Source of the DNA: Schmidtea polychroa
Taxonomy: Eukaryota
DNA length: 64,000 nucleotides
NCBI GenBank assembly: GCA_044892525.1
Contig: CM097885.1
Span: forward strand, 162,316,001-162,380,000
Reading direction: 5' to 3'
Shown: piece by piece, positions 12,837 to 64,000 of the stretch
Layout: each line of letters begins with the position of its first letter
How positions within the stretch are numbered: position 1 is the first letter of the stretch
Position numbers and translations under genes: made by a program
Notes under the pieces: model-generated
What the model was told of the DNA's origin: nothing
Database searches by the model: none
What the model saw: the letters and a program-made list of their open reading frames with translations, nothing else

Positions 12837-15800
12837 TGACTGTGACCGCTAATATGTATTTTTAAGCATTCAAGATTGTACAAAATTTGAATGTGAATTT
12901 TTATTATAATATATTTATTCATTTTCATAGCAATTGTTCAATTTTCAATTGTTTCTGGGCTTAAATATTTTCTTGAGGATTTGTAGTTCCCCCAAACGCT
13001 TGGTGCCCACGGCACGTACCTTGTTTGCCTAATGGTTAATCAAAGCCTGCATTCATGGACAACTTGAATAAAAAAATATTTTTATATACAATAGTTTTCG
13101 TAATAGTTCTAGTTTTATTTTCTTAAACTATTTCCTACCAATTCTGACAAAAGCAAACTGGGCTAAATTTAGTAACACAACAGAAGAAATATAATTTTAA
13201 TTAAATGTAATTATTTCTAATTAAAATGTGACTGATTTTTCAAAACTAATTGATAATATTGATTTCTGAAATTTAATAAAAATACAATACATTTAAACAA
13301 TTTTTAATTTTGTTTTAAATTTAAAAATGCACTTGATAAAAATATGTCCAAGTGACACGAAGGTTGATTAAATTAAAATGGAAGCTAAGTTAGGCCCCAA
13401 ATCAAAAACCAAATGCCCAGTTGCCTTCTTTTTGAACAAAGCGAATATTTTAATTAACAAATTGGTCTGTGGTTATGCATATGTAGGTAAAAATCTGCAG
13501 TAAAAAATTAATACAAAATGATTTTAAAAAAAGAATTTTAACAGCAGTCTGATTGTTGTGGCATGAAGTAGAAATTTTAAAATGTGAAATTTTCGATTGC
13601 ACAGCATTTCCATGGCATAGCTAGAGGTTTCATGTGTCCCTGTTCCTAATGAACTCCTAAGGTCCAGCCAGGCCGCATTATGGATAATATATCCCTGGAT
13701 ATTCCTTAAATATAAACAATAGACTTTATTTTGTATACTTGTAATTTGTAAACAACTATTCTATTTTAAATTTGTATAACATTCCAAAAAAGACACATAT
13801 TGCTATTTTATATTTATTTTGTTTGGAATTTGTAAAAATAGTATGGATCCATTGACAAAGTTATTTAGATGATATAAACTAATTAATTAATTAATTGAAA
13901 AAAATCAATTTATATTACAAAAAAAAATTCCTAAAGCTTTACAGCTAAATGTCAGTCTGTTAAGTTAAAAAAAAAAGGATTAAGCATTTTTTGGTTCTCA
14001 TATGTAAGTTATCGGATTTGTAATTAAGTGACAAAAAAAGAGGAATTAAAAACTTAGCCAAATTTCAATATTGGTTGATGATAAAAAGTGAGCGAAATAG
14101 AGCAAATGTTAAAGCGTGTTGAAAGAAGGGAGTGAATTTTTAATTAAAGTTTAATCAGATTCAATTTTTTTGATTAATGCAGTTTACCTTCAAATCAGTA
14201 CTGCTTTTCAGAAACCCTAGTTGCTACTAAGTAAAGGTTGATTGTATCGGTGAAAATTTGATCGATTGTGATTTCCGATAATAATCAAAATTATACCGTT
14301 GAGTTCTTATACTGATCAAGGACACATGAAAGTTAGATTTGTATCTCTATTTTTTCGAGCAATAAATTCAACTGAACACTTTTTTTTGCCATGTGTCGAT
14401 TAGTTGTCATATCAATATATAAATTTGTTATAAGTTTTTCGATAATAAATTATTTGTTTATATAATAAATGTGTAGTTATAAGAAACCGCAACTGAAATG
14501 CTTGTTTTACGATATAATTCGGCATTTTCTATGTCATCGTCCGGTAGGATAGAAAAATATATTTAAAAATTTTTAAATATTTTATTATAACTTATTTCAA
14601 TAATTCATAAATTAAACAATTTCTAAACATTGAAAAAAATTATTTAAGTTAATAATATAATACATTTAAAACAACAACAATCCCAACATTTTACAAACTA
14701 TTTAAAAATATTAAAAAGAGAATTTGAAGACTATAAATCAGTAATATATCGATGTTTTTTGATACTCACGAATTTTCGGCACTGCCTTTTTCAAGTGAAT
14801 ATTTCAAGTGAAAATATTCAAAATCAAGTGCACATTATTTATCGGATTTAACGATTTTATCAACAAAGCTTCATTAAAAAACGTTTCCGATAATTAAATA
14901 ATTATTAATAAAAATTTTAAAATATTCTTTAAAGAAAAAAAATTTGTTCATAAAATTAATAATTTAATTTCTTTTATTCTAGCTTACGATGACAGGAAAA
15001 CTGTCGAAATATATTGTAAAACGAATATTCAGGTGACACTTCTTATAATTAAATCTTTGTCAAGGTTATTTAATTATTCATCTGTAATTGGTTATTTTTT
15101 ATCATTGGAAAATTTTAAAAAAAAATTATAAAAATCCGACTAAACTAAATTATTAATTAAAAATAATTTGCAAAAACATGCCCAATTCAAAAATATTTTT
15201 ATAAAACTTAAACTTGAAAACCGCGAGTTTTAAGAAATAAAATAATAGTAAAACAGTTCTTAAACGGAGAGCTACCTTGAATGTGTTGATATATCGAGAT
15301 AAACACAAAGGAAAAGACTAAGAAACTAAAAATAAAATAAGAATGACTACGTAACTTAAAAAATAAGAAAAAATAAAGAGCAACTTTTAAAGAAATAAAA
15401 AACTTTGGTAAAAGAACATTTAGAAAATTTCAAATTTTGTAATATCTTCAAATGGACGTCTCTACTGACTTCAGAGGCAAAAAAATATTATTGGGTGAAA
15501 TGGGCAAATATAAAACTGAATAAACACAACTCTGCGCTCTAAAAACTTACGATAATCTAGTTATATATTTTGTATACACATCTAAATTAATAATTAATAA
15601 CTTATTTTGGCGTCCATGATGGGAAGAGGTATATTATTAATTATAAAACGGGAATTGTTTTCTGAATAATAATGATGCGTATTTCCTTTCATCTAAGAAA
15701 TTTCTAATCCTCTTATATAACTAGAAATAATAGGTAAAATATATTTTTTTTATGTTTGTTATAAGGCTAAAAATTCCATAATTAATTAAATGCTCCTTTA

Positions 15801-19034: not shown

Positions 19035-19360
19035 TGAAAGTGATTAAATTGAAGAAGTATTTAATTTCCAGATTTAAATAGATTTAAATAATATAATTAA
19101 AGTAAATAATAAAATTATAAATTAAAATAATAAATTAAATATATTTAAGAATGATTGAAGATTAAAATATAAAATATTTATTGAATGCTTGTGTATGAAT
19201 ATTCCCTATTCAAATATTAACTCATGCTTACGAAAATATCCTCTAAGCTAAAAACAGTGATTGTTTTAATAATAGGTATTTTTGTGTTGTTTTTAAAAAT
19301 ATAGTTTTGTTTTGTTTTTAAAATATGGATGTGATTAATTTAAGAAACCAAACTTCTAAT

Positions 19361-20378
19361 ATGGCGACCACGATGGCCAATTTTATCAAAGCACCAGAAA
19401 ATTTCGAGATGGGAACCGATGTTGAACATTTCATCAAGGAAACCGAAAGGTTTTTCGAATTAATGTCGATAGCTGAGGACTTCAAAGGTAGATTTATCAA
19501 AGCTTTTTTATCAACAGATGCAATTAAGAAATAGGATTCAACTGATGAGAAACAAAATTATATGGATAGACTGAGAGAAACCTTCAAAAAACCAATGAAT
19601 CTGATGGAAGACTTAAGTGAAGCGCTAGATTATAGACAAGGAGATGATTCCGCTGATGATTTCTGCAAAAAAAATTGAGAAATTATCAAAACGAATTCTG
19701 AAACACGAGTTAAATGAAGAAGAACTTCAAAAATTTCTCATATTCAATGCAGTGGGAGACCAAGATTTGAAAAAAGATTTGAGATTAAATGAATATAAAT
19801 CTGTGAATGAAATGAAAAAGAGAATTAAAAATAACGAGAAAGTAATTAAAGAATTAAATCGAAACAGTGACTCGATGGCAATTGTGGGAACTGAAACGAG
19901 ATATGCGGATATGGTAAAAAAAGCTGTAAATATTCCAGCAAGACCAATATTACGCAGATATAACGATATTCCTAGAAGAAATACGTTCAGCGAGCCAAAA
20001 CAGAATCGAGAATATCAGAACAAACAATCGAATTTTAATAATCAAGAATTCCAAACAAACAATAGGCCAAAGTTCAGATGCTGGGCATGTCATGAAGAAG
20101 GCCATAGAAGAACAGAATGCCCGAATGTTAAATGTTATCATTGTCACAGAGCAGGTCATTTCAAACACCAGTGCTTCCAATTAAGAAAGAATTTCAGAGA
20201 TGTAAGAGAAAATGAACAAGAAAACATATGGGGAAAATTCCAAGGAAATGGCAGAAATTTCAGAAACCGACAATATCAGAAACCAGTTGCGGCAATGGAA
20301 GAAGAAGAAGAACATGAAAATCAATACCCAAATGGATATGCTCCACCACGAGAGGAGGTGATCGGAGCACTGCAGTAA
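19361..20378 (+). pseudogene. gag with two CCHC knuckles
   Basis: CWACHEEGHRRTEC and CYHCHRAGHFKHQC; TAG at 19532-34 and a +1 shift in the A-run near 19670. Confidence 0.9.
20327..20369 (+). promoter_or_regulatory. Candidate -1 ribosomal frameshift signal (gag-pol)
   Basis: Slippery C CCA AAT in the gag frame, then stem TGCTCC(ACC)...(GGT)gatcGGAGCA. The pol frame is -1 relative to gag and open from 20318. Confidence 0.6.
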
Positions 20379-20380
20379 GT

Positions 20381-23300
20381 ATGAGTTATTTGTTGAATGG
20401 GGAATTGTATGATGATTGTTTGTATGATGATTGTTTGCATGTATTAAATAATGAGAAATATGAATATATAAGTAATGATGATAATTGTAAATGCGTCTAC
20501 GATGCAGATATTTATAGTGATTGGTATAATAATGGATTGAGGTTAGATGATTTTGGAAATGTTGTAGAGCATGTTTGTAATATTAATAATATAAATTATA
20601 ATAGTAATATAATTAAATATAATAAATTAGATGGTAGACCACGTGTCACATTATTGATCAATGGGAACGAAGTATGCTGTTTATTAGATACAGGAGCAAA
20701 GATCAGTGTGATGGATGAAAGTGTATTAGAAAAGATAGGAAAGTTTTATTTAGAAAAATGTTATGTTAAATTGAGATGTGCAAATGAGTCACCGGTATCT
20801 ATAGTAGGAAAGGTAAATATTACAGTTCAAATAGTGGGAACGAAAGAGGCGAGAATAATTGAATTTATTGTGGCCAAAGAGATTTCACCAAAGGTAATTG
20901 GAGGAATAGACTTCTTGAGAAAATTCGACATAAGGATAGTTTATTAAATGACGATGTAACTATTGCTGGAATAAAAAACGTAAAAGAATTGAGTGAATCT
21001 AACCAATGTAAAGATGGTAATGTTAGAGAGCTATGCAGAAAATTTGAGTCAATTTTTATGAAACACAAATGGGATGTGGGTAAGACAAATTTAATAACGC
21101 ATGAAATTTTAACATCAGGAAGACCTATTGTGATAAATCCAAGGCGACAGCCAGCACATTTGATTGGAAAGATTGATGAAAATATAAAAGAAATGGAAAA
21201 ATTTGGAATCATTAAAGAATGTAACTCGCCATGAAACACTCCTTTAGTGTGTGTAAAGAAAAAAGATAAAAATGATGTACGAATTTGTCTGGACTTTAGA
21301 GCACTAAACAATGTCACAGAACGACCAATATTTCCAATCCCAAATACAAATGAATTATTAGATACGTTAGAAGGTGCAAAATATTTCAGCACAAGTGATT
21401 TAGGGAATTTGTACTACCAAGTGGAACTTGATTAAGAATCGAGACTGAAGACAGCATTTTCTACCAAAAACAGACAATATTGTTTTAACAGGATGCCATT
21501 TGGAATAGCAGCAGCTCCGGCAACCTTTCAAAAGTTAATGAACATGGTATTAGGTGAACTTAATTGGCAAATAGCGATAGTGCATTTGGACGATATTCTT
21601 ATATCTTCAAAAGAATTAAAAGAACACTACGAAAATATCGAAAAAGTTTTCAAGAAAATAGAACAAGCAGGACTAAAAATTAATCCATCAAAATGTCAAT
21701 TCTTGAAAAATGAAGAAAAGTTCCTCGCACATATAATCAGCCAAGATGGAGTAAAAACAGAAGAAGAAAAAATTAAAGTAGTCAAATTTGAAAGACTCAA
21801 GTGTGTTAAGAAATTAAGAAGCTTTTTAGGGTTAACCAGTTACTATAGAAAATTTATAAAGGATTATACAGAAGATTCAAACCATTTGGAAAAGTTGTGT
21901 GGAAGCAAAGAGAAGAAGTTGATTTGGACAGAAGAATGTGAAAGTGCATTTACGAAACTGAAAGATAAGTTGATTAATGCACCAATATTAAAGTTTCCTG
22001 ATTTTAAAAAAACTTTCATATTGGATACGGACGCTAGCTTCGATCGTATTGGCTCTGTTTTGGAGTAACAGATAGTTCTGGAAAGGAAAATGTTATTGCT
22101 TATCATTAACATGCTATGTCAAAACACGAGGTGGGTTATTACATAACAAGAAAAGAACTTTTAGCAATATATCATTTCACAAATCATTTTAAACATTACC
22201 TTTATGGGAAAAGATTTATACTACTGACGGATCATAAAGCCATAACATATATGATGAAGACTAAGAAACCTATCACTCCACAATTCCAGAAATGGATAAA
22301 TTATTTAAGTAGTTTGGAGTTTTCAATTTAGGAAAGGAGAAGAACATTGCAATGCAGATACATTGTCAAGAAGTGAATGTATGACGTGCGTTCAATACCA
22401 AACCATCCATCTTAATCCAAAAACAGGGAAACTCAAAACGAAACTTTTGGCAATAATGACAGAAAACCCAGAACAAGAATGGCAAAGGAATTCAGAAAAA
22501 ATCAGAAATCATAAACAACATAAAGCAAAATGAGGGTAACAAATTCATAATAAAGAATGGAGTAATATTGACAGAAAATAATAAAATATGGATTCCGGAT
22601 GATAAAAGAATTGAATTCATTAAAAGGTATCACAAGAAACTGTGCCATGCTGGACCAATTAAAATTGAGAAATATGTGTCAAATAATTTTTCAATGAGAC
22701 ACATGAAACGAACGATCCAAGACGTAGTTCATAGTTGTGAAAATTGTCAAAAGAGGAAAACTACAACAACACGAACTAGGGAGCAAATTTGCAAAATGCC
22801 GGAAACAGGTTTATTTGAAACAATATTTATAGATTTTTGTGGTCCACTAAAACAAAGTCAGTATAGAATGAGATATATCGTCGGAATTATCGATAGTTTT
22901 AGTAAATATGTGGCACTACACGCAGTGAAATCACAAGATAAAAAAACCGTGACACCAATTTTAAGAAATAATTGGATTTTAAAATTTGGTGCGTCGAGAT
23001 TTCTACATTGTGACAGGGGTAAAGCATTTGAGAGCAAAGCTATGGATAATTTAATGAAGGAGCACAATATTAAAATTATATTTTCAAGCCCGTACCATCA
23101 TTCAGCAAATGGCCTAATCGAAAGACAATTCAGAACAATTAGAGACGCCATTCATATCACTCTAAAAGATAAAGATCACAAGAATTGGGTAGAGTTATTA
23201 CAAGAAGTCGAGTTTATGTTAAATTCTACATTTCAGAAAACAATTAGACAAACTTCAAGTGAAAGAGTTTTTGGAAAAAGAATATATAAAGAATGGTCTA

Positions 23301-23575
23301 CAAATATGTCGGTTGAGAATATGAGTTTTAAAGAAATAACAGAAAGAAAATTCAAAGTAGGAGACATAGTGCTGGTAAAAAGAAATGATAACAAAGACGA
23401 AGATCGATATGTTGGACCTGCCGAAGTAATAAAACAAATACACGAGAGAAGTTATGAAGTACAATTTGAGAATGGAAAAAGGCTTATAAGAAACATAGAG
23501 TGGATAAAGCTTTTTAAAAAGGAGGATGTGAAAGTGATTAAATTGAAGAAGTATTTAATTTCCAGATTTAAATAG
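20381..23575 (+). pseudogene. pol: protease, RT, RNase H, integrase, disrupted
   Basis: LLDTGA, CLDFRALN, VHLDDIL, ILDTDAS, TDHKAI, zinc finger H..H..C..C, FIDFCGP, HCDRGKAF, NGLIER; several stops and frameshifts. Confidence 0.95.
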
Positions 23576-23857
23576 ATTTAAATAATATAATTAAAGTAAA
23601 TAATAAAATTATAAATTAAAATAATAAATTAAATATATTTAAGAATGATTGAAGCTTAAAATATAAAATATTTATTGAATGCTTGTGTATGAATATTCCC
23701 TATTCAAATATTAACTCATGCTTACGAAAATATCCTCTAAGCTAAAAACAATGATTGTTTTAATAATAGGTATTTTTGTGTTGTTTTTAAAAATATAGTT
23801 TTGTTTTGTTTTTAAAATATGGTTGTGATTAATTTAAGAAACCAAATTTTCTAATTT

Positions 23858-32076: not shown

Positions 32077-34426
32077 CAGGGGTGCCCACTAATTTTTCTA
32101 GGAGAGCTACATTCACATCCAAAATGTGTATGCGATCTACTTTTTTAATACTTACATAATATTTACCTACAATGCAATAAATTCATCACAATAAAACAAA
32201 TATATGTCAAAATATGGAAAATTAAACTATATAACTATTTATTATAAAAAATGTAACTTAGGAAATCAAATTTAATGAAAATTATTTTTATATAGAACTT
32301 TTCAATGTTGATGCTCTACATTGGGTTGAATCCACTAGATTTTTGTAGTTTGGGATATAAGTGCTAAGACAACTTCTTAGGCTGGATTCCAAATGGTCAT
32401 CTGTTAATGTTGCTCGGTACTTTGACTTTATAATTTTCATATGTGAAAATGCAGACTCACATAAATAAGTTGAACCAAAAAATGATACTAAATTTTCGAA
32501 GCATTTTTTCAAGTTTGAATATTTATCCTCTGATAGATATTTCCATACATTTGGTTCGGAAGATCTTGATTTAATGAAGATATCATTTTGAAGTGTGATT
32601 ATTTCCATTTCAAGTATAGGGATATCCATTTTAAACAAAGTTGAAATTGAATCTGCAACAATTTCTGGTTTTATTTTTGGATTAAATGAAAGGACATAAA
32701 TGCAGCCACAATTTCAAGTTTCTTGAAGTCTTGAAAACGTCTCTCGAACTCTAAAACCAAAATTTTGATCTGTTCCGCATATCTCGTAATATTAAAGTTG
32801 ACATTTTCAGATTCTTTTAATTGTGACAACATATTTGGAAAATAACTTAAATTTTTGTCTTCTATTTTGGTAATAAGTAAATGAAGCTTTTGTATAAATG
32901 CATTGATTGAACTTATCATATCGAATATCAATTTATCCTTACCTTGTAAGTCGAGATTTAATTCATTCAGAATTGCAGTAATATCTACTAAAAATGCCAA
33001 ATCCAAGAGCCAAACATCATCTTCCAATTGCTTGAACTCATCACCTCTTGCGGCAAGGAACAACTTAATCTCAGAAAGCAAATCTCTAAATCTTTGTAAG
33101 AATCTTCCTCTACTTAGCCACCTTACATCTGAATGCATCAGTAATTCAGCAGGACCTTCGCTATTACTTTCTTCAATTTGTAATTTGAAAAGTCGTCTCT
33201 GAAGACTTCTTGCACGAATCGAGTTAGCAATTTTGAATGTTATTTCCATAATATCTCTCATATTCAGAATTTTAGCACACAAGGCTTGTTGATGAATAAT
33301 ACAGTGGTAGGAAAGAAAATCTGGGAATTCACAATCATTCCTACAACATGCTATAAATCCGTTGTGATGCCCTGTCATAGCTGGTGCGCCATCTGTTGTT
33401 ATTGATACAAGCTTACAAATTTGGAGCTGAATGATGTTGGCATAAGCTTTAAAATTCTGAAATATATCCTCACCTCGAGTTTTACTTTTGAGTGGTATAA
33501 TTGTTAATAATTCTTCCTTCGTAGAAAAATCTTTAAAGACCATTCGAATAAAAATTATAAGCTGCGAAATATCAGCCGCATCAGTTGATTCGTCTGCTTG
33601 CAATGAAAATGCGGTACAATTTCCTATGTCTAACATTAACTGATTTTTTAAATTGGTACTTATTTCTTGGACTCTCCGTGTAACTGTATTACGGGACAAT
33701 TGCATATCAGTAATAGCAGAAATTATATCTGATTTATTTTTAAAATCACAAAATAATGATTCTGCCGCTTCTAAAAATGCTTCTTTTACAATTACTCCAT
33801 CACTAAAAGATTTCTTATTTTTTGCCAGAATGTAGCTTACTCGGAAAGATGCAGCTGTAGCTGACTTTGATTTGGATGTTAGCTTCGTAAAAAATGACTG
33901 TTGAAAAGAAATGCATGTTTTCAGTTCCATGATTTTAGACTTGCGTAGTTCACTGTCAAGTGGATAATCAACTGCAAAATTCTTATGAATTGTCTTGAAA
34001 TGCCTTTCCAAATTCCCTCTTTTTGGTAATGAAATAGTAGCTTTACAAATTAAGCAACAACATTTACCTTTAATCATTACAAAAAAGTACTCCTTCTCCA
34101 TTTCTTCGCTATAATGATAAGTCTTGGCTTTTTTATTTAGCATTTTTTTATTTAGCATTTTTAAACAAAATTAATTTAACAAAATAGCTTAAGAAAATTT
34201 TTCACTTTGTTACACCAAAATTTTTTTATTTAGCATTTTTAAACAAAATTAATTTAACAAAAAAGCTTAAGAAAATTTTTCACTTTGTTACACAAAAATT
34301 TAAGCATAAAACAGAAATTTTATATAAAATCTAAATTTATATAAAAAATATTTTTTTTATCAAGATCTACTAAAAAATCCTTCGCGATCTACCGGTAGAT
34401 CGCGATCGACCTTATGGGCACCCCTG
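32077..34426 (-). mobile_element. Complete hAT element (Buster/SPIN, GTF2IRD2-like group)
   Basis: 12-bp perfect TIR CAGGGGTGCCCA; perfect 8-bp TSD CTATATAT; subterminal CGCGATCTACCGGTAGATCGCG palindrome; ~78-bp tandem duplication upstream of the ORF. Confidence 0.95.
32288..34158 (-). pseudogene. hAT transposase with one frameshift
   Basis: CCCLICK..RHFKTIH, FSLQADESTD, SITTDGAPAM, YHCIIHQQAL, VRWLSRG, FGSTYLCESAFS. A 1-nt loss near 32690 splits the 495-aa and 116-aa ORFs. Confidence 0.92.
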
Positions 34427-35215: not shown

Positions 35216-35345
35216 TGTTTCGACCAGTCAGAGAGGGATTGCCTCTGACTGGCAGTTCGTTGCATGCCTTTTTTCTATCGCGTCTGTGTGCGCGGTCTGG
35301 TTAGACCGATTCTTGTTGGTGTGCGCATACAGACGCGAGCAATGG
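35216..35345 (+). promoter_or_regulatory. Palindromic leader cassette, copy A
   Basis: 10-bp hairpin CCAGTCAGAG/CTCTGACTGG (35224-35252); 16-bp arms 35278-35293 / 35323-35338; inner CGGTCT/AGACCG hairpin. Closely matches 58515-58641 (-). The regulatory role is inference. Confidence 0.6.
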
Positions 35346-35507
35346 ATTGATTTTGTAAATAGGTAATTTATTACTATTGTAAATTTTTATGGATTGATTT
35401 TTGTAAATAGAAATTAGATTGGATTTTTGGAAATGTTGTTTTACCGGATGAATTGGAATTTTTTGGAAGACATGTTGAATTGTTTTTAAATTGGATTTGT
35501 TGAAAGA

Positions 35508-37142
35508 ATGGCGGTCGAAATGAATTTGCGATGTGATCTAGGTTGTGATCAGAAATTCTGTCTTACATCTTTTCAAAATATTAACTTTGTGAAAGGCGAT
35601 CTCATTTATACTGATTTCCAAGGAAAAGTTCCCGATAAATTAATTGTATCGATTGTCACGGAACTTTCACAGTTGTTGCCATCAATTTTCATGATTATCC
35701 ATGGGATCAGGTCTTCTAAATTCACAGATAAGTTCGTCAATAAAAACAACGATATTGTATTATGTATTCGTAAGAAAATAATATTGAATCATTCTATATC
35801 GGATTTTTCAAATCGATTTGTTTGCAAAACGAAAATCAGAAATTATTTAATTGAAGAATTATCCAACAGATTTTCTCAGTTGTCCGAATTAAAACATTTG
35901 GGTAAGTCGAAGTTTGAAATCGCGCGTGTGCTTCGACGGAAACTGCTACTGGATAAAATGGCATATGACGATAAAATGATTGAGACGAGTTCAGCTACGA
36001 GATTGTTTAATATTACTGAAGTTTATCGTGCACAAATGGAAGCAGCTCGATAAAAATCTGACGTTGGAATGGACATGATCCCTGATTGTCGATCGCAAGT
36101 TTATCGTTCACAAATGGAAGCAGCTCAACTCTATTCCCAATCGGCTGAGAGGCGACCATTAGGATGTTCAATGATGGCATTATCTGATGATATGGAACTG
36201 AACAAATTGTTATTATTCAAAAATACAATTATTATTCGTGATCTTGAATTTAAACCCGAACATGGTAGCAGAGCGTGGTTCCGGCTAGCCAGCCAGAACA
36301 AGGTATTATATAGATTTTTTATGCATGATCTTGTTATTATATTAGCAATAGGTTATATGTGTTATATTTTTATTATATTTGATATTGTTGAAACATTTCC
36401 CCTATGGCCTGCCCTCCCTAACCCTATTAGAGGTGGATTGGCGCGGGTATTTGTACAAACATTAACAGGGGGGACAATTACTCTCGAAGTTGAATCTAGT
36501 GACACGATAGAAAATGTAAAAGCGAAAATACAAGATAAAGAAGGTAGTCCACCTGACCAGCAACGATTAATTTGCGCGGGGAAACAATTAGAAGATGGGC
36601 GAACATTATTTGATTATAATATTCAAAAGGAGTCTATTTTGCGTTTAGTTTTGCGATTGAGTGGTGGAATGCAAATATTCGTGAAGACACTGACAGGAAA
36701 AACAATAACTTTGGAAATAGAATCAAGTGATACTATTGAGAAGGTAAAGGCTAAAATTTAAGAAAAAGAAGGGATACCCCCAGGGCGACAAAGACTTAAT
36801 TTTGCCGGGAAAGTATTAAAAGATGGCCTAACGTTATTAGATTATAACGTTAGGAAAGAAGCCACGGTACATCTGGTTTTGGGTCTGGCAGGGGGAAGTC
36901 CAGTATCAGATGCTGAGTTCGAGGCAGGTTACAAGAGACGAACTGGGTGGAAGATTTCGTTAGGGCGTCTGCGTAACCGGGCTTTAGGAGATGGATCGGA
37001 CCCTAGGGAAGAACAAAGGAGAATGGAGGCATACGAAGATAAATATGAGGAAGTGATAAACGAATTTGAGGAGCTGAGGAATAATTCTCGGGAGTTAGGG
37101 CGGGAGAAAGAAGCAACAGGTAACATCACACAGTTTAAATGA
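35508..37142 (+). pseudogene. Chimeric intronless frame: unknown-PSMA6 fragments-hydrophobic segment-ubiquitin-ubiquitin-tail
   Basis: ORFs at 35508, 36069 and 36879 are in the same frame, broken only by TAA at 36051-53 and 36759-61. Contains [45 protein letters not shown] (PSMA6-like). Ub1 36441-36668 is 64/76 identical and Ub2 36669-36896 is 58/76 identical to canonical ubiquitin. Confidence 0.8.
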
Positions 37143-39284
37143 CATCATTGTAATGTTACAACAAAAACTGGCTCGAAATTTTATTAATAATAAAATTTCA
37201 ATTTTTATAATGGTGGTTTATCAGAAAAAGAATTTCATTTATTTAGCCATTTTAGAAATGGCTTTCAAGTAAGTTTTAAAATTTTAAGTAATTTTTAAGA
37301 GTTGAATTTTGATTTTTTATAGTTTTATATAGAATTATTTCAATTTAGATATAATTTGAATTATAATTAATGAAAGTAAATGCCAAAAATATGTAATCTT
37401 CCAAAACATTTCGGGAAAATTCGCTAAATATGAACAAAGTAATTTTTCAGATTTTTGTAACTTAATTTTAACTTTAAAATAAATTTTACGGTGATTTTTA
37501 TGTCATTTCATTACCACTTAACGTTGATTCTTCATAAATTGATTTCAAAAAATTTTCTGTGATCATTTTATTTTTCAAAATTTTCTGAAAAAGTTATTAT
37601 AGAAACTTGTCACAGCGGCGCATTTCTATATATCGAAAGTTTGCATATAATTTTTAGTATATGTTGTGTTTGTGTGCATTTATTTAATTTTTCTACTATG
37701 TTTTTTGATTTCTATAATGTAAAGCGTATCTCATTATACTATCAATGAGAACATCAGCGAGAAATCAAAGTAAGTTTGTATGTTTGTATAATATAAGTTT
37801 TAGATTTTTTTTGTATAATAAATGTTTCTCAGCCGGTTCTGATGTATGGCGTGGAGCAGTGCAATATAAAGAATAAGTCTAGGTGAAGGCTTTCCACCTT
37901 TCCGGTTTCAATATACTGAGAGGCGTCTAACAGACGTGGATAACGCAAGGTCAAAATAATATTAAATTAGTCGAGAAAAAGAGCCTGCAAGTGTAAAATA
38001 CTCAGTCAAATTAGAAAAAAATCTACAAAATGGTTTTTTTTGTGAAATTCTAAGATACTTGTTTGCATTTATAACTCTTTTGTCTGACAATTATTATTTT
38101 AATTTTATTATTAATATTTAATTAAATATATAATTTTATAATCAAATATAATCCCTACAAAAGACCTTTATGAAATATATTTTGATTTATTACAGGTAAA
38201 ATTATAAGCAAAAATAATCATGACAAAAAGCCATTTATATTTTGATTTTTAAATGATATTCATAGAAATAAACAATTAATTTTAGTAAACGGAAGTGAAT
38301 GTCCCAGGTAAAAAAATATTTTCTTTGATTATTTTTATTTTTTAAGATAATTATTATTTAATTCATTTTGTTTATATATTCTGATTTTTCAAAAAAGTAG
38401 GGTAAACCACCACAAATCTATGTTTATAATCATATATATAATCATATATTTATGACAAAAATTTGAGGTTGTCCTTGAGAATTCATTGATCAATTTTTTT
38501 ATAATTTTCAATTATCATATAAAAGTATTAGTAAAAATTAATAAAAAAGAATTGCGAAAGAGAATATACTAGACATGTGAAATGTCAAAGTAAAACCTTT
38601 GTTAAAATCAGGTTATTGTGGAAATCCTCGTAAATTGAATTTTTTATAGTTCAATCATAAATAATTTTAAAAAATTAGTTAGTAATGTAATAATTTGTTC
38701 AAACGGATAGTATAAAACAAAGTTTCTAAAAAACAAAGTTAATTTTATTTTTACACTGTATTTTAAGATATGTAGAATTATAAAAAATTTTCATACATAT
38801 TTATATTTAATAATTTAATATTTTTGTCTATTGAGTTATTTTTAAAGGTTTAAAGAATTCTACTTAACTGAGGCCATTATGCAATAAAGTAGAAAGATAT
38901 TTGGCCTCTGTATCCTACCATCGCCCTAATTTAATTATGTAATTAATCTGGATTATGCAATTACGTAATACTTGATTAAAAATTATGTCAATTTGAAGCA
39001 TGTTAATGTGAAGATGGTTACGTTAATCGGAAGTGTTGAATATTTCGTGCAAGTGTCCTTTTATTAAGAAAATCTAACACAATAATATTATCGAAATTAT
39101 CACAATTACACTTTTGTTACACATTTTAACGAAACAATCTCCGTTTACACAACTTTAAATAACTTTTTTACTGTGCACACTTCAATTTAAGCCAGAATCT
39201 TTTCACAGGGATTAAATTTCCAACGAGAAATGCAAAACAATGCATTATAAATTTCGAAAACAGATAGTAAATAATTATAGTAAT

Positions 39285-47530: not shown

Positions 47531-49010
47531 TAGGGTTTGCAATCCGGATATCCGGATAGCGAACTATTCGGATTATTCGAACAATTTTGACTATACGATT
47601 ATCCGGAAACCATTTATTTAAAAAAATTATTTACAACTTTAATGTTTTGAAAACTGTAATCATTGAATCTGCAGTGTAAAGGTATTTTACTAATATTTAT
47701 TTAATGCTATATTAATTTAAAAAAATTTGTTTTAAAAACTTGTAGCCTTGTCAATAAAATCTGAAGTGTGCTATATTTTTAAAGTTTATGAGAGCAGAGG
47801 ATTCTTTTTAATAATTTATATACTTTGCATCTGTTTTAATAAATACAGTAAATTATAACTGTTAGTAAATTTATTTAAAAAAAAACATATTTTTAGTTTT
47901 TAACAGTACTGTAGCCATGTCAGAACGATCTGAAGTTTGGAATCATTTAAAAAAAAATGAAAAAAATAGAGATGTTGCTTTTTCTAAACATTGCAGTAAA
48001 GACATCGGATGTAAAGGATCATCAACGTCGCCACTTTTAAATCATTTAAAACTTCATAAAATTATCATAAATTCAGCTTCAACTTCAATCGATAAAATTC
48101 ATGAACCATCGACATCAAAAAAACTTAAAAGTGATTCCAGTAAGTTGTCTCGATGTGTGGCAGGGTTTTCAATGAATAACTTAGTGAAATCACGAGCCAT
48201 CAACGGATATGTCCGAACTAAAGGCTTTGTCATGTCCCTCTACTGTAACGAAAAGTATTTTAAACTTTTATGATATAATAAAAGAAGAAACTATTGGTGT
48301 TCTCAATGAATTTTTAAAAAATGAACATTAAATTTTCAATAACAGTAGACGAATGGACCGATAATTCAATGAATACATATCTTAATATTTCACTTCATGC
48401 CATTGTCGGCAATTTGATGAACAAATTTAAAATGTTTGTTTTAGGATTAGTTCATAAAAAAGGTACATGCAATGCTGATCAAACCAAACTTTATGTTTAA
48501 AATAAATTAAAAGAATTTCAAATTAATATAAAAAGAGACATAATATCTTCAACACGTGAGGGTACCGCAGTTATGGTAAAATATTGAAGAATCCTTGGTA
48601 TTACATCTCAACTTTGTTATAACCGCGGCCTTCATTTAGCAATAACCGATATATTGTATAAAAAGAAACCAACAACTTATTTTTGTGAAGAAAATGAAGA
48701 AATACCAGTCTGTGTTGAACAAGAAATAGAATATGGCGCTGTCGCAAACAGTAAATATATGACTATAAGCAGTTTTGAAGATGCCAACATAGACTTCGAA
48801 CAACAAGAAGGAGATCATTTTATAGATTTGACCAAAGAAGTTAACATCAGAAAAGTTATAAGAACCATAAAATCCTCTTTAGTCAAAAACAATATTTTAC
48901 AAGGATATGTTAAAGATAAAGAGTGTAAGTTGTTGCAGTTGATGTTGGATATAAAAATCCGTTGGAATTCCTTGATAACAAAGATAAAAACACTTGCTCA
49001 AGAATAATGA
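47531..49010 (+). mobile_element. 3'-truncated hAT element with BED-finger transposase relic
   Basis: 5' end TAGGGTTTGCAATCCGGATATCCGG; SEVWNHLKK..CSKDIGCKGSSTSPLLNHLKLH; LMLDIKIRWNSL. Confidence 0.75.
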
Positions 49011-51829
49011 GTACTTTGAACATTTTAAATCAAAATTTTAATATTTAAAAACAAAATTTTATTCGCATATTATTAAATCAACAAACTTATAATAAACAAA
49101 TATTTTGCCATAACAAAGAAAATATGTAATTTTTTGACATTTCTATCCCTATAATCTTTTATTAAATTTTAAAAAAATTCACTTGAAAAAGGCAGTGCCG
49201 AAAATTCGTGAGTATTAACAAACATCGATATATTACTGATTTATAGTCTTCAAGCTCTCTTTTTATTAAATGATTTATCTTAAATTTTTATTATATTAAT
49301 TATTTACTTAATTATTCAATAGTTTTAACAATTTTATTAAGAACCGGAAAATGATATAATTTAAATAAAAAAAATAGGTAAGCCATGTGTAGAAACATTT
49401 TTTTCCTTTATCTGAATTAAATATTTTATTTTGTTTAAATGCTATAAAATTCTGTTACATTATTACGTTATATTATTGTCAATTTAATGACTTCAGAATT
49501 GAAATAATTGGAATAATATAAAATACTGACAAATTATTGCAATAATAACTAAAAATAACTTAAATATTTTTATGAGAAATTCGCTTTCAGTAATTGAGAT
49601 ATTTCAATTATGATAATATATGAGTCTGGCGTTATGAAATATGTGAGATTCTGGCCATAAATTTGTCTGATAGCAGATGATAGACATAAATAATAAACAA
49701 AACTGGAATAAAAAAAAATAATAAAAAGGATAAACATAATTTTGTTGATTCAACGAAATAAAAATATTAATTATAATTTTTTTCTAGTGTAAATAAATTT
49801 CAATTTTAAACCAATGAAATTTCATGAAATTTCAATTTATATTAGACAACATAATCCTTTCATCCAATTATTCCTTTTATAAACCAAAATAAAATATTAC
49901 TTTTATTAATAAATGCAATGAAAAATATTTGTTATTTTATCCCATATTTTTTCCATTAATCAAATATTTTTTATATTTTAAATTTCGCAAATATATATCG
50001 ATTCATACGAAAATTTATTTTTACAACTTTATTTTTAAAATTGTATTGAAAAATTCACAAATTTCATATGTCAATTTTTTAATAAATAAATTATGCCACC
50101 GATTTTCAAACTGGGATTTTAGAGTCATATGAAGGGGGTTGCTAAATAAAAATAAGGAAAGGATTTTCTGAGAAAAAATAAATATTATATTTAATATTAC
50201 ATTTGTTTTAAAACTACAGCCCAAAATAATATTTTTTTCAAGTGTTAGGCGAGTTCGAATTTTATTTAAAAGTTTGTAAATGCGCGGCTCTAAATTAGAA
50301 ATAGTTAAAAGCAAGTTATTATCAAGCGATATGAATCCATTTTTATACTGAGTTTTCAATATTAGTTTACTGAAAGGCCCTTTATTTCATTTATTTTTTT
50401 TATTTTCCTTTATTCACTTCGACCGGAAAGCCAAAACTTACCTAAATCCTGCAATGCAAACTGTAGTTGTAGTATTTTATCAACCAATAGTTCGTTGAGC
50501 TAATTGTTGGTATTTTTTGTAACGTTTCTATTACAGCAAAGTTTTTAAGAATGGATGAAATATTAATTTTTAATTATTTTTGACGTATTAGAAATCGTAG
50601 AGCTATAAATTTAAGATTTTTTGAAAAAAAAAATTTTTTTCCAGAACCTCAATGAGTTATTTAAATGGTAAAATGACCTCAATTGAAATACTTTGCTTCT
50701 ACTGTTTTTCATTATTCTAAGTTTATAAGCTCTAAATATTTTTAAAACCACATAAAATATAGTTCAATCGTAATTTATTTAATTAATTATTTCAGTTAAT
50801 TTGTAAAAAAAAATTAAAAATAACTTGAAAAACTCCAAAAGCTTCAGTGAGTGATATGAAATGTGCGAGACCCTAGGTGTCCCATTGCTAATTGGTGAAA
50901 CACCGCCTAAATCAGAGTGATTTTACAAACACACCAATCTCAAACTGTTTCCTATCCACATTTCTGAAAAGTAGTATCACCCAAGTAATTTCTATTATCA
51001 TAATAATTACAAAGATGAGAAAAGTTGGTACAAAAACACTTCAAACGGGATCTCTAATCTAGCCAGGAACTTGTTGTCGGCAGTTTTACTGCAACCAAGT
51101 GACTTGTTGATTGCGATCTTTCAAAAATCTCAATAAATGTTTTGTTTTAAATTATTTTAAATAAACTATATGTAAAGTATGTATTTATCTTAGTAACTGC
51201 TAAAAGACTCTTATTGTAATTAACTAGAGTTACTAGACAGTTTCTTGTTTGCATCTCAATATAATTATTTTAAATTTGCTAAATATTTGGTAACTTTATT
51301 GTCTATATTCCTATAATTTTATCATGTGGCCCGCCAACAAAAAATTAATTTCCATGAGTCCCGTGCACTAAAAAGGTTTCTTAATCCTGATTGAGACCTT
51401 TCATATTTTTAATTGGATATGCCTTTCCCATGAAATGAATTACAATTTCCATGAATTTGAGCTAGTTCAAAAACGACAATTATAAAAACGAAAAAAAAAT
51501 TCAGCTTATTAGTTGCTCAATTGTTTTTATTTATCCAAATTTTTATCAATTCATTTAAACAAACAAAGATAATTTTTATCATTATTGATTTTTATTCATA
51601 TTATTTCAAAATAAAAATTTGTAATAATAATAAAGGTAAAATTCCGAAATAAAAAACTTCTAAATGAATAATTTATAAGTTAGAGTATTTCGATTGAAAA
51701 GCAATATAATAGAAATAATCATATAATTTATTTATTTTTATTTATTTTAAATTCTTTTTTAAAATCAACTATATTTTAAGCATCATCTATAAATTTTGTA
51801 GGTTGTAAAGGCAATCTATTTATTGCAAT

Positions 51830-53115: not shown

Positions 53116-53420
53116 ATGTCACAAAGCTGTTCTTCGTTTGGTCATGAACTACTGTGCGACCTCAAATGTGATTTGAAGAATAAAATTGCAAATTTAAAAT
53201 CGGAAGAACGTAAGTTTAGCTTGAGCATAGATGAGTCGACAAGCGTTCGAAACCGACGTTACATGAACGTTCATATCTATTATCACGACGGAGAATCTGA
53301 CAACCTTGGGCGTGTGCGAATTCAGGGATCATGTCCCTTAGAAAAAGTATATGAGCTCTTAGATGCAAAGCTTTCAGACTTCAATTTGAACCTCCAGTCG
53401 GACATCGTCTCAAATTCGGG
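53116..53420 (+). pseudogene. hAT transposase fragment
   Basis: KFSLSIDESTSVRNRRYMNV...NLGRVRI...FNLNLQSDIV. Confidence 0.7.
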
Positions 53421-54600
53421 AAACTATCACCAGCGCATCAACAGTTATGCTACAATCACGACATACACTTGGCAGTTATGGAGATAATGTATCAAAAACG
53501 ACTACACGTAATCTAAGAGGTCTAGCGGTTTCATCTATATAATAAAATACATAAATAAAGTAGTGAGATGGTGAAAATAATAATGATTCATGAGCACATT
53601 GATCAGCAAATTCGATGAAGTAATAATCGAAAACAAAAAAATTAAACGTGAACTCACCGAAATGAAAGAAAAATTCCAAATGCAAAACTACAATTGTTCA
53701 CCAAACCGTTATAACAGACTCGGTCAGATTCACGAAACCGAAAAAACAAAGCCTCTTACAACAACACAGACAAAACTAAAGATGAGATTTGTTACTAACA
53801 CCAAAAGTTCGGGAACAAAGCATACAAATGCAACAACCCATGCAACTACAAAACACAGGAAAACTGATGAAGTCGCCTTTAATCGTACCGACATTTGGCG
53901 ACAAAAATAAAACGTGCAATCACAAACAATAATTTCCTGATTGACACAGGTTCAGTCATCTCCCTATTACCCCACCAAATGTTCAAAAAACACAAAACAA
54001 CAAATAACAAACTCACCGCAGCCAAAGGTACCAACATAAGTACATTCGGACAACATACTACGACGATAACAATCAACAACAAAGAGTACACCTGGTCGTT
54101 CACTATAGCCGAGGTACAACAACCAATAATCGGTGCTGATTTCTAATCACACTCTAACTTACTAGTAGACTGCAGAAATAAAGACTTAGTCGAAAACCCC
54201 ATCACAAAAACAAAAACAAAACTATCAACAACAAATGACTACCCACAAATTGAGATTGGAGTAATCCAAACAAACCCAACCAATAAAAACAAAGCAACCA
54301 TCACGGTCCCGAAATAACTCGATTAATAAAACATTTCAACAAACTGACCAAACCAGTAACACTCAAAAAGAATTCGGACAACCCAACCGAACACTCAATC
54401 ATAACATTGGCAACCCAGTACACTCTAAAGTTAGACAACTGGACCCACAAAAAACAGAAATCACTAAACCAATTTTCAAAGAATTACACGACAACAAAAT
54501 AGTAAGACATTCAAACTCAGAATGATCTTCCGCACTTAAGAAAACGAGTCTGGTAAAAAACCAATCGAGTTTTTTTCAAAAGTTTCAGATCACACTCAGA
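53420..54600 (+). pseudogene. Decayed Gypsy gag-protease-RT fragment
   Basis: FLIDTGSVISLLP...PIIGADF (aspartic protease), followed by an RT N-terminal relic. Confidence 0.75.
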
Positions 54601-57684: not shown

Positions 57685-58326
57685 TCAAATGACATTATCA
57701 ATATTTCTGAAATTAATAAATAATAATAATAATAATTGAATAAGTCCAAGAACAATTTTATTTTCCGCCTCTACAGGGCCGCGTGGATCAGTTTTGAATA
57801 ATAACATTTTGTCCAGTTCAATATCATAAGATAATGCCATCATTGAACATCCTAATGGTCGCCTCTCAGCCGATTGGGAATAGAGTTGATGGATATCCGC
57901 CATAGAAGAACATATTATATCACAAGTCATTTTATGTCCAATTTCAGAATTAAATCGAGCTGCTTCCATTTATGCACGATAAACTTGAGATCGACAATCA
58001 GGGATCATACCAATCATAACACCTCCAGTACTTTCAGTAATATTAAACAATCTCGTAGCTGAACTCGTCTCAATCATTTTATCGGGAACTTTTCCTTTTG
58101 CATATCTATCGATTTCATTAAGCCAATTTTTAACATTGTTAAACGAATCTTGATCGGTAACATCAACCACAACAATAATTCCATGAGCTCCTCTGGAATA
58201 ATACGAGGTTATAGTTCCAAATCTTGCTTGATATGCAGTATCCCATATTCGCAATGTCATTGTATCACAATTTTCAGCATAATAGTCATCTGCGGATTTG
58301 ACGAAATAGTCCCAATCTGGATTCAT
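57685..58326 (-). pseudogene. Chimeric intronless frame: internally deleted Rab1 fused to a PSMA6 fragment
   Basis: 58326-58099 [60 protein letters not shown] is Rab1-like. It continues in frame as [55 protein letters not shown] (PSMA6-like). Single TAA at 57970-72. Confidence 0.85.
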
Positions 58327-58514
58327 TTAATTATTTCCAACCTCCGGTTTCAAAACAAAAAGTTCCAGAATTCAATTTAAAAAACCTTCCAAATCTCGCA
58401 GTTTAAACAACTCCAAAAAATCAAATCTAATTTAATAATCTACAAAATTAATACCAAAAATCAATACCAATCAAAAACTACAATGCAAAACCAACTTACA
58501 ATCTCAATCGAATT

Positions 58515-58641
58515 TCCATTGCTCGCGTCTGTGTGCGCACACCAACAATATTCGGTCTAACCAGACCGCGCACACAGACGCGATATAAAAAAGCCAAACA
58601 ACTGCCAGTCAGAGGCAATCCCCCTCTGACTGGTCGAAACA
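58515..58641 (-). promoter_or_regulatory. Palindromic leader cassette, copy B
   Basis: Perfect 16-bp arms 58523-58538 / 58568-58583 and 11-bp hairpin 58605-58633; homologous to copy A. The regulatory role is inference. Confidence 0.6.
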
Positions 58642-63761: not shown

Positions 63762-63799
<38 letters not shown>

Positions 63800-63819
63800 G
63801 GTAAATTATGAGGTCAATG

Positions 63820-63942
63820 CGCGTCTGTGTGCGCACACAGACGCGAGCAATGTCATTTTTTGGGTTGAATTATTGGTATATCGCGTCTGTGTGCGCTTTT
63901 TGCTTTGTTGATTGGAATTGTGTGCGCACACAGACGCGAGCA
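63820..63942 (+). promoter_or_regulatory. Palindromic leader cassette, copy C (two units)
   Basis: Perfect 26-bp palindrome 63820-63845, then arms 63881-63896 / 63924-63939. Followed by a TTG-rich tract like those after copies A and B. The regulatory role is inference. Confidence 0.6.
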
Positions 63943-64000
63943 AGAGGTAGGACAATAATTGATTAGGTTTTTTGTGATTGTTGTAATTTTTAGATTTTTT

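What the first reader, a model, noticed from the sequence alone, without database searches (positions are those of the whole stretch)
35508..37142. Locus A: one 545-codon frame joining PSMA6 pieces, a hydrophobic helix, two divergent ubiquitins and a charged tail
Seen: the three listed ORFs share one frame with only two TAA codons. Ub1 has lost K6 and K11 (K6Q, K11G), keeps K48 and K63, and ends RLSGG. Ub2 has I44N and ends GLAGG. Ub1 is preceded by [16 protein letters not shown] (possible TM helix) and NPIRGG, which looks like the tail of a third ubiquitin unit. Established: I44 is the main ubiquitin recognition patch, and R72/R74-GG matter for E1 and DUB recognition. Inference: the ancestral product could have been a poorly cleavable ubiquitin decoy or a membrane-tethered degron. 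The C-terminal tail is locally GC-rich and of unknown source.
Basis: partly seen in the sequence, partly recalled or inferred. Interest (0 to 1): 0.75.

Follow-up and report, generated by a model that had tools for sequence, protein, structure and literature searches.

The report
Dead patchwork gene from housekeeping fragments
Locus A is a recently disabled, intron-free patchwork of pieces copied from proteasome, ubiquitin and probably Rab1 messages, one of at least three nearby copies sharing a hairpin-rich leader; it is a curiosity of gene-fragment shuffling, not a working ubiquitin decoy.

Summary
Frame 35508-37142 has 545 codons, two internal TAA and a final TGA; the other frames have 17-56 stops and shuffles average 40. 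It carries scrambled PSMA6 pieces, a hydrophobic stretch, two head-to-tail ubiquitin units (85% and 76% identical to canonical) and an orphan 47% GC tail.

The stops are real. Transposon genes in the same window read open in the standard code, so the locus cannot now make the 545-residue protein.

A sibling, locus B (57685-58641, minus strand), joins Rab1 pieces to a contiguous, intron-free PSMA6 piece and has its own TAA. A third leader (63821 onward) runs off the window. All three share a leader with strong GC-rich hairpins.

A and B are 92-100% identical in shared blocks but differ by large rearrangements, all in frame. Amino-acid change looks nearly neutral: dN/dS is about 1, the copy evolves about 7 times faster than true PSMA6, and ubiquitin replacements are no more conservative than random. 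The "TM helix" is translated T-rich DNA.

Best reading: a decaying copy of a lineage-specific chimeric retrogene-like family whose frame was kept open until recently. No intact or expressed relative was found, but this genome appears absent from the protein databases. The decoy or degron idea has no support. Interest is moderate.

The parts
35216..35507 (+). Shared leader. It has a sharp 5' border (TGTTTCGACCAG), hairpin 1 at 35225-35251, and hairpin 2 with 14-nt arms at 35280-35293 and 35323-35336 enclosing a smaller hairpin at 35293-35308. An AT-rich stretch with many small indels follows, up to the ATG.
   Evidence: The leader core is 94-98% identical to locus B (58641-58517). The DNA fold is -33.6 kcal/mol, z -6.5, with 0 of 200 shuffles as good. 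The motif GCGTCTGTGTGCGC occurs 8 times, at three loci, against 0.02 expected. There is no Rfam match.
35508..35618 (+). N-terminal 37 codons of uncertain origin. A second ATG-AAT at 35520 lines up with the Rab1 start (Met-Asn) of locus B.
   Evidence: There are weak, non-significant echoes of PSMA6 201-215 (E 0.087). No family hit.
35619..35645 (+). PSMA6 piece (QGKVPDKLI, about residues 52-60).
   Evidence: The 18 nt encoding GKVPDK are identical to locus B. The piece matches P0005 residues 52-60.
35646..35969 (+). A 324-nt (108-codon) A-specific insert of unknown source. It is flanked by an imperfect direct repeat (GATAAAWTRATTG) and is open only in frame 1.
   Evidence: No relatives in Pfam, PDB, PHROGs, the word search or viral contigs. 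AlphaFold2 pLDDT was 33. The codon-position GC pattern is atypical for host coding sequence.
35970..36221 (+). Scrambled PSMA6 block. In order: residues 57-73; a displaced duplicate of about residues 91-109 containing TAA at 36051-36053; residues 83-98; a 69-nt deletion relative to locus B; then residues 121-153.
   Evidence: A 30-nt internal duplication lies at 36019-36048 and 36097-36126.
36222..36437 (+). Middle segment of unknown origin. It includes the T-rich hydrophobic stretch (36330-36389), a short GC-rich stretch, and NPIRGG (36420-36437).
   Evidence: Codon-position composition. No relatives in a scan of 1.84 billion representative proteins. No significant match to PSMA6 or to ubiquitin.
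36441..36668 (+). Ubiquitin unit 1, 64 of 75 residues (85%) identical to canonical. It has lost K6 and K11, has H68R and R74S, and keeps I44.
36669..36896 (+). Ubiquitin unit 2, joined head-to-tail to unit 1 and 76% identical to canonical. TAA at 36759-36761 sits at the Gln31 position. It also has I44N, R72G and R74A.
   Evidence: Against unit 1 the synonymous difference is saturated (pS 0.82) and pN is 0.18.
36897..37142 (+). An 81-codon charged, purine-rich tail (47% GC) followed by TGA. Source unknown.
   Evidence: The only family hit is sub-threshold: DUF7801, E 0.009, 16.6 bits against a cutoff of 33.2. The word search, PDB, PHROGs and viral contigs were blank.
37189..37194 (+). AATAAA hexamer 47 nt after the stop codon. 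No poly(A) tract follows it.
   Evidence: Read.
57685..58641 (-). Locus B, the sibling copy. Leader 58327-58641. ORF 57685-58326 of 214 codons with one TAA (57970-57972) at the Gln94 position of PSMA6. The Rab1 part (58099-58326) begins at Rab1's own Met and lacks the P-loop and switch I. The PSMA6 part (about 57772-58092) covers residues 54 to about 160-173 without gaps. The frame then runs into a TTA microsatellite.
63821..64000 (+). Locus C, a third leader with two copies of the palindrome. It is cut off by the end of the window.

Best explanation
Locus A is a recently inactivated, intron-free member of a small lineage-specific family of chimeric, retrogene-like loci.

Shown:
- At least three loci within 29 kb share a roughly 290-nt hairpin-rich leader with a sharp 5' border.
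- Behind the leader lies one continuous frame built from sense-oriented, intron-free pieces of abundant housekeeping messages. Locus B has the Rab1 start plus PSMA6. Locus A has scrambled PSMA6 plus two adjacent units of a polyubiquitin message plus segments of unknown origin.
- The copies differ mainly by large duplications, deletions and replacements with short repeats at the joints. All of these keep the frame.
- Point changes are few (0-8% per shared block) and look unconstrained.
- Each copy has its own recent nonsense mutation.

Inferred:
- The mosaic was assembled on RNA/cDNA by reverse-transcriptase template switching, or by microhomology-mediated copying.
- Unequal recombination and conversion among family members then reshuffled it.
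- The frame, but hardly the amino-acid sequence, was kept open until shortly before or around the A/B split.
- Locus A has since drifted neutrally.

Today translation from the ATG at 35508 would stop after 181 codons. The ubiquitin units therefore cannot be made from that start, and they lack the residues needed for normal activation and recognition.
For: - Standard code: a 495-residue hAT-like transposase and the Gypsy gag, protease, RT and integrase ORFs are open in the standard code. TAA is therefore a stop.
- Frame statistics for A and B.
- Sibling locus and shared leader.
- Intron-free origin: locus B aligns without gaps to residues 54-173 of a full-length PSMA6 and to its mRNA (73.6% over 322 nt). 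B shares 27 derived residues with that flatworm-type PSMA6. B starts with Rab1's own N-terminus.
- The Ub1-Ub2 junction is the native head-to-tail polyubiquitin junction, and synonymous sites are saturated between the units.
- Indels of +324, +30 and -69 nt are all multiples of 3.
- Near-neutral protein evolution: dN/dS about 1.3, relative-rate chi-square 9.0, and ubiquitin replacements as radical as simulated random ones.
- Stops fit drift: 4.5-5.2% of substitutions create stops, so 1-2 are expected in A and about 0.5 in B since their split. Two and one are observed.
- Two of the three stops are CAA-to-TAA changes at Gln positions.
- A reverse-transcriptase source, a young Gypsy element, lies in the same window.
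- Fusion of several transcripts by template jumps is documented (PMC2104539).
Against: - No poly(A) tail, no target-site duplication, no LTR and no terminal inverted repeat was found around A or B. The mode of copying is therefore not shown.
- The parental genes of this genome were not available. 'Intron-free' and the age of the copies rest on a relative's mRNA, not on the true parents.
- Keeping the frame through about 10 junctions is hard to square with pure junk, yet no function or expression could be tested.
- The origins of the leader, the insert and the tail are unknown.
- Patchy A/B identity implies more family members than I could see.
- The argument that zero frameshifts is improbable relies on an assumed indel-to-substitution ratio.
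Confidence: 0.55

Rival explanations
1. Purely neutral chimeric processed pseudogene. The patchwork was never translated, and the long frame is a leftover of young coding-derived pieces plus luck. The first reader searched for long frames, which adds ascertainment bias.
For: - dN/dS is about 1.
- The copy evolves about 7 times faster than true PSMA6.
- Ubiquitin replacements are as radical as random ones, and the stop count is at the neutral expectation.
- Catalytic or recognition residues are destroyed in every module.
- The hydrophobic stretches come from T-rich or microsatellite DNA.
Against: - About 10 junctions and indels in A and B are all in frame, which has a chance of order (1/3)^10.
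- The insert (108 codons) and the tail (81 codons) of unknown origin are open only in frame 1.
- There are no frameshifts across about 1.25 kb of recognisable modules at about 10% non-synonymous divergence.
- The ubiquitin core shows 0 non-aliphatic changes against 3.2 expected (P about 0.03).
Confidence: 0.25
2. Cargo ORF of a mobile element or an endogenised virus-like RNA. The hairpin leader would be the element's end or 5' UTR. Host message fragments would have been transduced in frame, as in retroviral gag-onc fusions, the maize Bs1 element, or pestiviruses that capture ubiquitin ending exactly at GG. Such systems need an open frame in cis.
For: - The 5' border is sharp and identical in A and B, with unrelated flanks.
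- There are three copies in 29 kb.
- The frame is preserved without sequence constraint.
- The ubiquitin array ends exactly at GG.
- The leader is strongly structured.
Against: - No second end, terminal repeat, LTR, target-site duplication or poly(A) was found.
- No transposase, reverse transcriptase or replicase lies within 8 kb downstream.
- The leader and the orphan segments have no match in viral or metagenome contigs.
- The 5' end does not follow the Helitron TC rule.
Confidence: 0.1
3. One reading: the ancestral protein was a functional, poorly cleavable ubiquitin decoy or a membrane-tethered degron.
For: - The frame was once open.
- The ubiquitin cores are conservatively kept.
- The junctions RLSGG-M and GLAGG-S deviate from LRLRGG.
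- A 20-residue hydrophobic stretch precedes Ub1.
Against: - The hydrophobic stretch is T-rich DNA.
- Sibling B has no ubiquitin at all, so ubiquitin is not the family's common denominator.
- Overall the ubiquitin replacements look random.
- No relatives with this architecture were found in any search.
Confidence: 0.06
4. The gene is intact. Either TAA is read as an amino acid (a ciliate-type code), or the two TAA are sequencing or assembly errors.
For: - All three in-frame stops in A and B are TAA, and all frames end in TGA.
- Two TAA sit at Gln positions.
Against: - Long transposon ORFs in the same window are open in the standard code with TAA and TAG as stops.
- With TGA as the only stop, nearly every frame of the window becomes open, so that test has no power.
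- The third TAA replaces Phe, not Gln.
- CAA to TAA is the commonest nonsense route. Read-level errors could not be checked.
Confidence: 0.04

Closest known systems
Chimeric retrogenes and retropseudogenes made by template switching during LINE reverse transcription (bi- and tripartite U6-, WEIRD- or SINE-mRNA fusions; Gogvadze et al. 2007, PMC2104539)
   Same: - Intron-free copies of different cellular transcripts are fused directly in the same orientation.
- The 5'-most part is a structured RNA-like sequence copied up to a sharp 5' end.
- Highly expressed housekeeping messages serve as donors.
   Different: - No poly(A) tail or 10-20 bp flanking direct repeats are present here.
- There are many more pieces, and they are scrambled rather than collinear.
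- All joints are in frame.
- The copies are related to each other (shared leader and PSMA6 blocks), not independent events.
- The copies are clustered locally.
Host-gene transduction by LTR retroelements or retroviruses (maize Bs1, gag-onc fusions) and ubiquitin capture by cytopathic pestiviruses (from my own knowledge)
   Same: - Host message fragments are joined in frame into one ORF.
- The ubiquitin insert ends exactly at its C-terminal GG.
- The frame is preserved without preserving the donor proteins' functions.
   Different: - No LTRs, gag, pol or viral replicase sequence lies at or near the loci.
- The leader has no viral match.
Pack-type DNA transposons that carry gene fragments (Pack-MULE, GingerRoot PMC6839031, Helitron)
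   Same: A repeated element-like unit that carries fragments of several host genes.
   Different: - Those elements capture genomic DNA with introns and have terminal inverted repeats plus target-site duplications, or Helitron TC...CTRR ends.
- Here the fragments are intron-free and no such ends were found.
Polyubiquitin genes and their processed pseudogenes
   Same: - Two head-to-tail 76-codon units with no spacer.
- Synonymous sites are saturated between the units, as in old repeats of a polyubiquitin gene.
   Different: - The units are 85% and 76% identical to the otherwise invariant protein.
- One unit carries a stop.
- They are embedded between unrelated sequences.

Membership tests
Ubiquitin family (Pfam PF00240) | Sequence match to the ubiquitin fold profile above the curated cutoff | tested here: met
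   115 bits against a cutoff of 25.4 for Ub1 plus the start of Ub2, and 45.9 bits for the rest of Ub2.
Canonical, conjugatable ubiquitin | Invariant sequence with the LRLRGG tail, the L8/I44/V70 patch and seven lysines | tested here: not met
   Ub1 has K6Q, K11G, H68R and R74S. Ub2 has I44N, R72G, R74A and a stop at Gln31.
Functional polyubiquitin gene | Uninterrupted ORF of identical head-to-tail units | tested here: not met
   The junction is native, but the units differ at 29 of 152 positions, there is one stop, and the flanks are foreign coding sequence.
Proteasome alpha subunit PSMA6 | Collinear full-length alpha-subunit domain with the N-terminal alpha signature | tested here: not met
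   Only fragments are present. Locus B covers residues 54-173 with a stop (Pfam Proteasome, E 6e-9). In locus A the pieces are scrambled, duplicated and deleted. Neither locus has the N-terminal signature.
Rab1 small GTPase (locus B) | P-loop GxxxxGK[ST] and the switch II DTAGQ motif | tested here: not met
   The Ras-family hit is 2.4e-17, and Rab1A is the best PDB match. However, the P-loop and switch I are deleted and DTAGQ has become DTAYQ.
LINE-mediated chimeric retrogene | Direct fusion of intron-free copies of two or more transcripts in the same orientation | tested here: met
   'Intron-free' is judged against a relative's mRNA, not against this genome's own genes.
LINE-mediated chimeric retrogene | 3' poly(A) tract and flanking 10-20 bp target-site duplication | tested here: not met
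   There is an AATAAA but no A tract. No flank k-mer of 10 or more bases recurs at a plausible 3' end.
LINE-mediated chimeric retrogene | 5' partner is a known small structured RNA (U6, 5S, 7SL and the like) | tested here: inconclusive
   The leader is strongly structured but matches no Rfam family. Comparison with planarian spliced-leader RNA could not be made because the paper is not held.
Pack-type DNA transposon or Helitron | Terminal inverted repeats plus target-site duplication, or 5' TC with a 3' hairpin-CTRR; captured DNA keeps its introns | tested here: not met
   There is no inverted copy of the 5' end in the window. There is no target-site duplication. The 5' end is TGTTTCG. The fragments are intron-free.
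Ciliate-type nuclear code (TAA = Gln) | Bona fide genes need TAA or TAG read through | tested here: not met
   The transposase and retrotransposon ORFs are intact in the standard code.

The most novel reading that the evidence does not exclude
The hairpin-leader loci are dead copies of a living family whose members must stay translatable while their amino-acid sequence is free to change. That would be a retroelement-like or virus-like RNA needing an open frame in cis, or a flatworm gene family that builds new proteins by intron-less shuffling of cDNA fragments of self genes. In-frame scrambling would then be the selected product, not an accident.
Probability: 0.2. Interest if true: 0.7.

Novelty: new variant of a known kind. 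Interest (0 to 1): 0.4.

Why it matters
If these are only decaying chimeric pseudogenes, the locus is a tidy example of multi-template cDNA patchwork in an AT-rich invertebrate genome. It is probably a planarian: there is a mir-753 hit, and the PSMA6 pieces share 27 derived residues with a PSMA6 that I infer to be flatworm-type. In that case its main value is to warn annotators against calling divergent ubiquitins functional. If the in-frame rule holds across a genome-wide family, it would point to a process that selects for translatability alone. That bears on how retroelements or RNA replicons recruit host sequences and on how new genes arise from fragments.

Tried and rejected
- Ciliate-type code: suggested by TAA sitting at Gln positions and TGA ends. 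Rejected because transposon ORFs are intact in the standard code, and with TGA as the only stop nearly every frame opens.
- hAT-transposase origin of the N-terminus and insert: pairwise BLASTP gave E 0.05-1, not significant.
- PSMA6 origin of the middle segment, insert and tail: only non-significant echoes, E 0.09-12.
- Third ubiquitin unit before Ub1: not detectable.
- snRNA, spliced-leader RNA or tRNA-SINE identity of the leader: no Rfam or ARAGORN hit. The planarian spliced-leader paper is not held.
- Helitron, Pack-MULE, GingerRoot or LTR architecture: no terminal repeats, target-site duplication or second LTR.
- Exact look-up of eight window ORFs in the 15-billion protein collection: none present, so this genome seems not to be represented.
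- Word searches with the first piece, the tail, and residues 1-140 of the middle piece: blank within the length limits of 100-317, 69-220 and 129-411 residues.
- Full scan of 1.84 billion representatives with 36054-36437: only four true PSMA6 fragments.
- Viral and metagenome contig scans with leader motifs and orphan segments: blank.
- AlphaFold2 of the first piece: pLDDT 33, not usable, so no fold search was run.
- Literature searches for planarian chimeric retrogenes and for mir-753: nothing relevant.
- Constraints observed: the frame was never joined across its stops and the pieces were searched apart. The N runs were left untouched. The window was not taken for human.
Full report
**What is there.** The window is 23-34% GC and full of transposons. 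It contains no tRNA genes, and the only curated RNA match is a mir-753 precursor at 62788-62849. From memory, mir-753 is a planarian (Schmidtea) family; I could not confirm that in the held literature. I do not take the window for human. Translating 35508-37142 gives 545 codons with TAA at 36051 and 36759 and TGA at the end. The other five frames hold 17-56 stops. In 5000 block shuffles the mean was 40 stops and the minimum 22. The frame is therefore far from chance.

**Are the TAA real stops?** Two of the three in-frame TAA in this family sit where the parent protein has Gln, and all frames end in TGA, so I tested a ciliate-type code. It fails. A 495-residue hAT-like transposase (32671-34158, minus strand) and the gag, protease, RT and integrase ORFs of a young Gypsy element (19035-23828, LTRs 99% identical) are open in the standard code. 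With TGA as the only stop, nearly every frame of this AT-rich window opens. The TAA are therefore stops, and translation from the ATG at 35508 ends after 181 codons.

**Modules.** Pfam finds ubiquitin twice.
- Against PDB polyubiquitin, Ub1 (36441-36668) differs at 12 positions. These include K6Q, K11G, H68R and R74S.
- Ub2 (36669-36896) differs at 18 positions. These include Gln31 to stop, I44N, R72G and R74A.
- The two units are joined exactly head-to-tail. Their synonymous sites are saturated (pS 0.82) and pN is 0.18. This is what two old repeats of one polyubiquitin message would show.
- The PSMA6 pieces were placed against P0005. This full-length 246-residue PSMA6 comes from an AT-rich, polyadenylated metatranscriptome contig and surfaced through the large protein scan.
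- Locus A holds, in this order: residues about 52-60; a 324-nt insert; residues 57-73; a displaced duplicate of about 91-109 carrying the first TAA; residues 83-98; a 69-nt deletion; then residues 121-153.
- The N-terminal 37 codons, the insert, the middle segment and the tail have no significant relatives anywhere I could search.

**The sibling loci.**
- A self-comparison found locus B on the minus strand at 57685-58641. Its 214-codon frame has one TAA; shuffles gave a mean of 16.6 stops and a minimum of 5.
- Locus B begins with Rab1's own N-terminus. It lacks the P-loop and switch I through in-frame deletions, and DTAGQ has become DTAYQ.
- B then continues without a gap through PSMA6 residues 54 to about 173. 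This stretch is 62-75% identical in protein and 73.6% identical in DNA over 322 nt to the P0005 mRNA. Its TAA sits at PSMA6 Gln94.
- The B frame then runs into a TTA microsatellite that reads as poly-Leu.
- A and B share a roughly 290-nt leader with a sharp, identical 5' border and unrelated flanks. The leader has two strong hairpins (fold z -6.5), and its 14-nt GC-rich palindrome arm occurs 8 times, at three loci, against 0.02 expected.
- The third locus, C (63821 onward), runs off the window.

**How the copies differ.**
- The leader core is 94-98% identical and the PSMA6 blocks are 92-100% identical.
- The 3' part of the leader is only about 80% identical, with many indels, and the N-terminal coding parts cannot be aligned. 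This patchiness suggests exchange with family members outside the window.
- The structural differences within the shared part are +324, +30 and -69 nt, all multiples of three. Short direct repeats or 2-nt microhomology sit at the joints.
- Counting Rab1's two internal deletions and the module junctions, about ten joints in A and B all keep the frame.

**Selection or drift?** Several signals fit drift:
- Shared A/B codons differ at 1 synonymous and 5 non-synonymous sites, giving dN/dS of about 1.3 from very few changes.
- Against an outgroup, the copy lineage has 14 private replacements and the true PSMA6 lineage has 2 (chi-square 9.0).
- In simulations on inferred parental ubiquitin codons, the observed replacements are no more conservative than random (mean BLOSUM -0.28 against about -0.4, P 0.3-0.4). 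One stop is seen against about two expected.
- 4.5-5.2% of substitutions would create a stop. The 2 stops in A and 1 in B are what drift since their split predicts.

Other signals argue against pure drift:
- There are no frameshifts in about 1.25 kb of recognisable modules at about 10% non-synonymous divergence.
- All large indels are in frame.
- The orphan insert (108 codons) and tail (81 codons) are open only in this frame.
- None of the four ubiquitin-core changes is non-aliphatic, against 3.2 expected (P about 0.03).

My reading is that the frame was kept open for most of the family's history while the sequence was barely constrained, and that A and B are recent casualties.

**The supposed TM helix and third ubiquitin.** The hydrophobic stretch (36330-36389) is encoded by DNA with 60% T at codon position 2 and 64% T at position 3, and only 8-16% GC there. 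Codons with T in the middle give Phe, Ile, Leu, Val and Met. Locus B shows the same effect from a microsatellite. I regard it as translated spacer. NPIRGG shares only RGG with a ubiquitin end, and no tool detects a third unit.

**Mechanism.**
- Shown: sense-oriented, intron-free fragments of abundant messages in one frame behind a common structured leader; a family of at least three; rearrangement outpacing substitution; recent nonsense mutations.
- Inferred: assembly by reverse-transcriptase template jumps, as documented for bi- and tripartite chimeric retrogenes (PMC2104539), or by microhomology-mediated copying. Recombination among copies would follow.
- A young Gypsy element with RT lies 12 kb away.
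- The hallmarks of a single LINE-type insertion (poly(A), target-site duplication) are absent. So are the hallmarks of DNA-transposon capture. No enzyme gene lies within 8 kb downstream. How the copies spread is therefore open.

**Limits.**
- None of eight exact ORFs from the window, transposon ORFs included, is in the 15-billion-protein collection. The blank searches therefore say little about paralogues in this genome.
- The word searches also cannot see proteins outside 0.55-1.75 times the query length. An intact 545-residue paralogue would have been visible only to the one full scan, which used residues from 36054-36437.
- The parental genes, transcripts and reads were not available.
- The stop-containing frame was never joined, and the N runs at 61332-61474 and 62379-62653 were left alone.

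**Verdict.** The locus is best filed as a new variant of chimeric retro(pseudo)genes. Its in-frame scrambling is unexplained and deserves a genome-wide check. Interest 0.4.

Noticed in passing
19035-23828 (+): Ty3/Gypsy-type LTR retrotransposon with 300-nt LTRs that are 99% identical. It has gag (zinc knuckle), aspartic protease, RT/RNase H and integrase ORFs, and pol is split into several ORFs.
   Followed up: partly
32288-34158 (-), 34142-34297: hAT-like transposase with an open 495-residue ORF, plus a separate 116-residue ORF carrying the hAT dimerisation domain. A 78-nt tandem duplication sits at its 5' end, about 1 kb from locus A's leader.
   Followed up: partly
62788-62849 (+): mir-753 precursor, 75 bits against a gathering score of 62. 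It is the only curated RNA family match in the window and a hint that the genome is a planarian's.
   Followed up: partly
37230-37330 and 37770-37812 versus 62740-62830 and 63683-63726: The stretch just 3' of locus A is collinear (84-86% identity) with the stretch that contains the mir-753 hit and precedes leader C. It shares a GTAAGT splice-donor-like site. This may be a larger repeat unit or an unrelated dispersed repeat.
   Followed up: partly
   Followed up: no
47917-48273 (+), 53116-53487 (+): Further hAT-type remnants: a BED zinc-finger ORF (sub-threshold, 19.2 bits against 20.6) and a fragment resembling the region around the first catalytic Asp.
   Followed up: no
58642-58655 and 63763-63800: (ATT)n microsatellites directly abut the 5' border of leaders B and C but not A. 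The genome is rich in such repeats, so this may be chance.
   Followed up: no
14709-14804, 49173-49271, 58889-58949: A short dispersed repeat (93-94% identity) occurs three times, once about 250 nt beyond locus B's 5' border.
   Followed up: no
L001 (JGI sample 3300030569, 977 nt): A polyadenylated, AT-rich PSMA6 mRNA in an environmental metatranscriptome. It is the closest relative found to the parent of the PSMA6 pieces (27 shared derived residues). It presumably comes from a free-living flatworm in that sample.
   Followed up: partly
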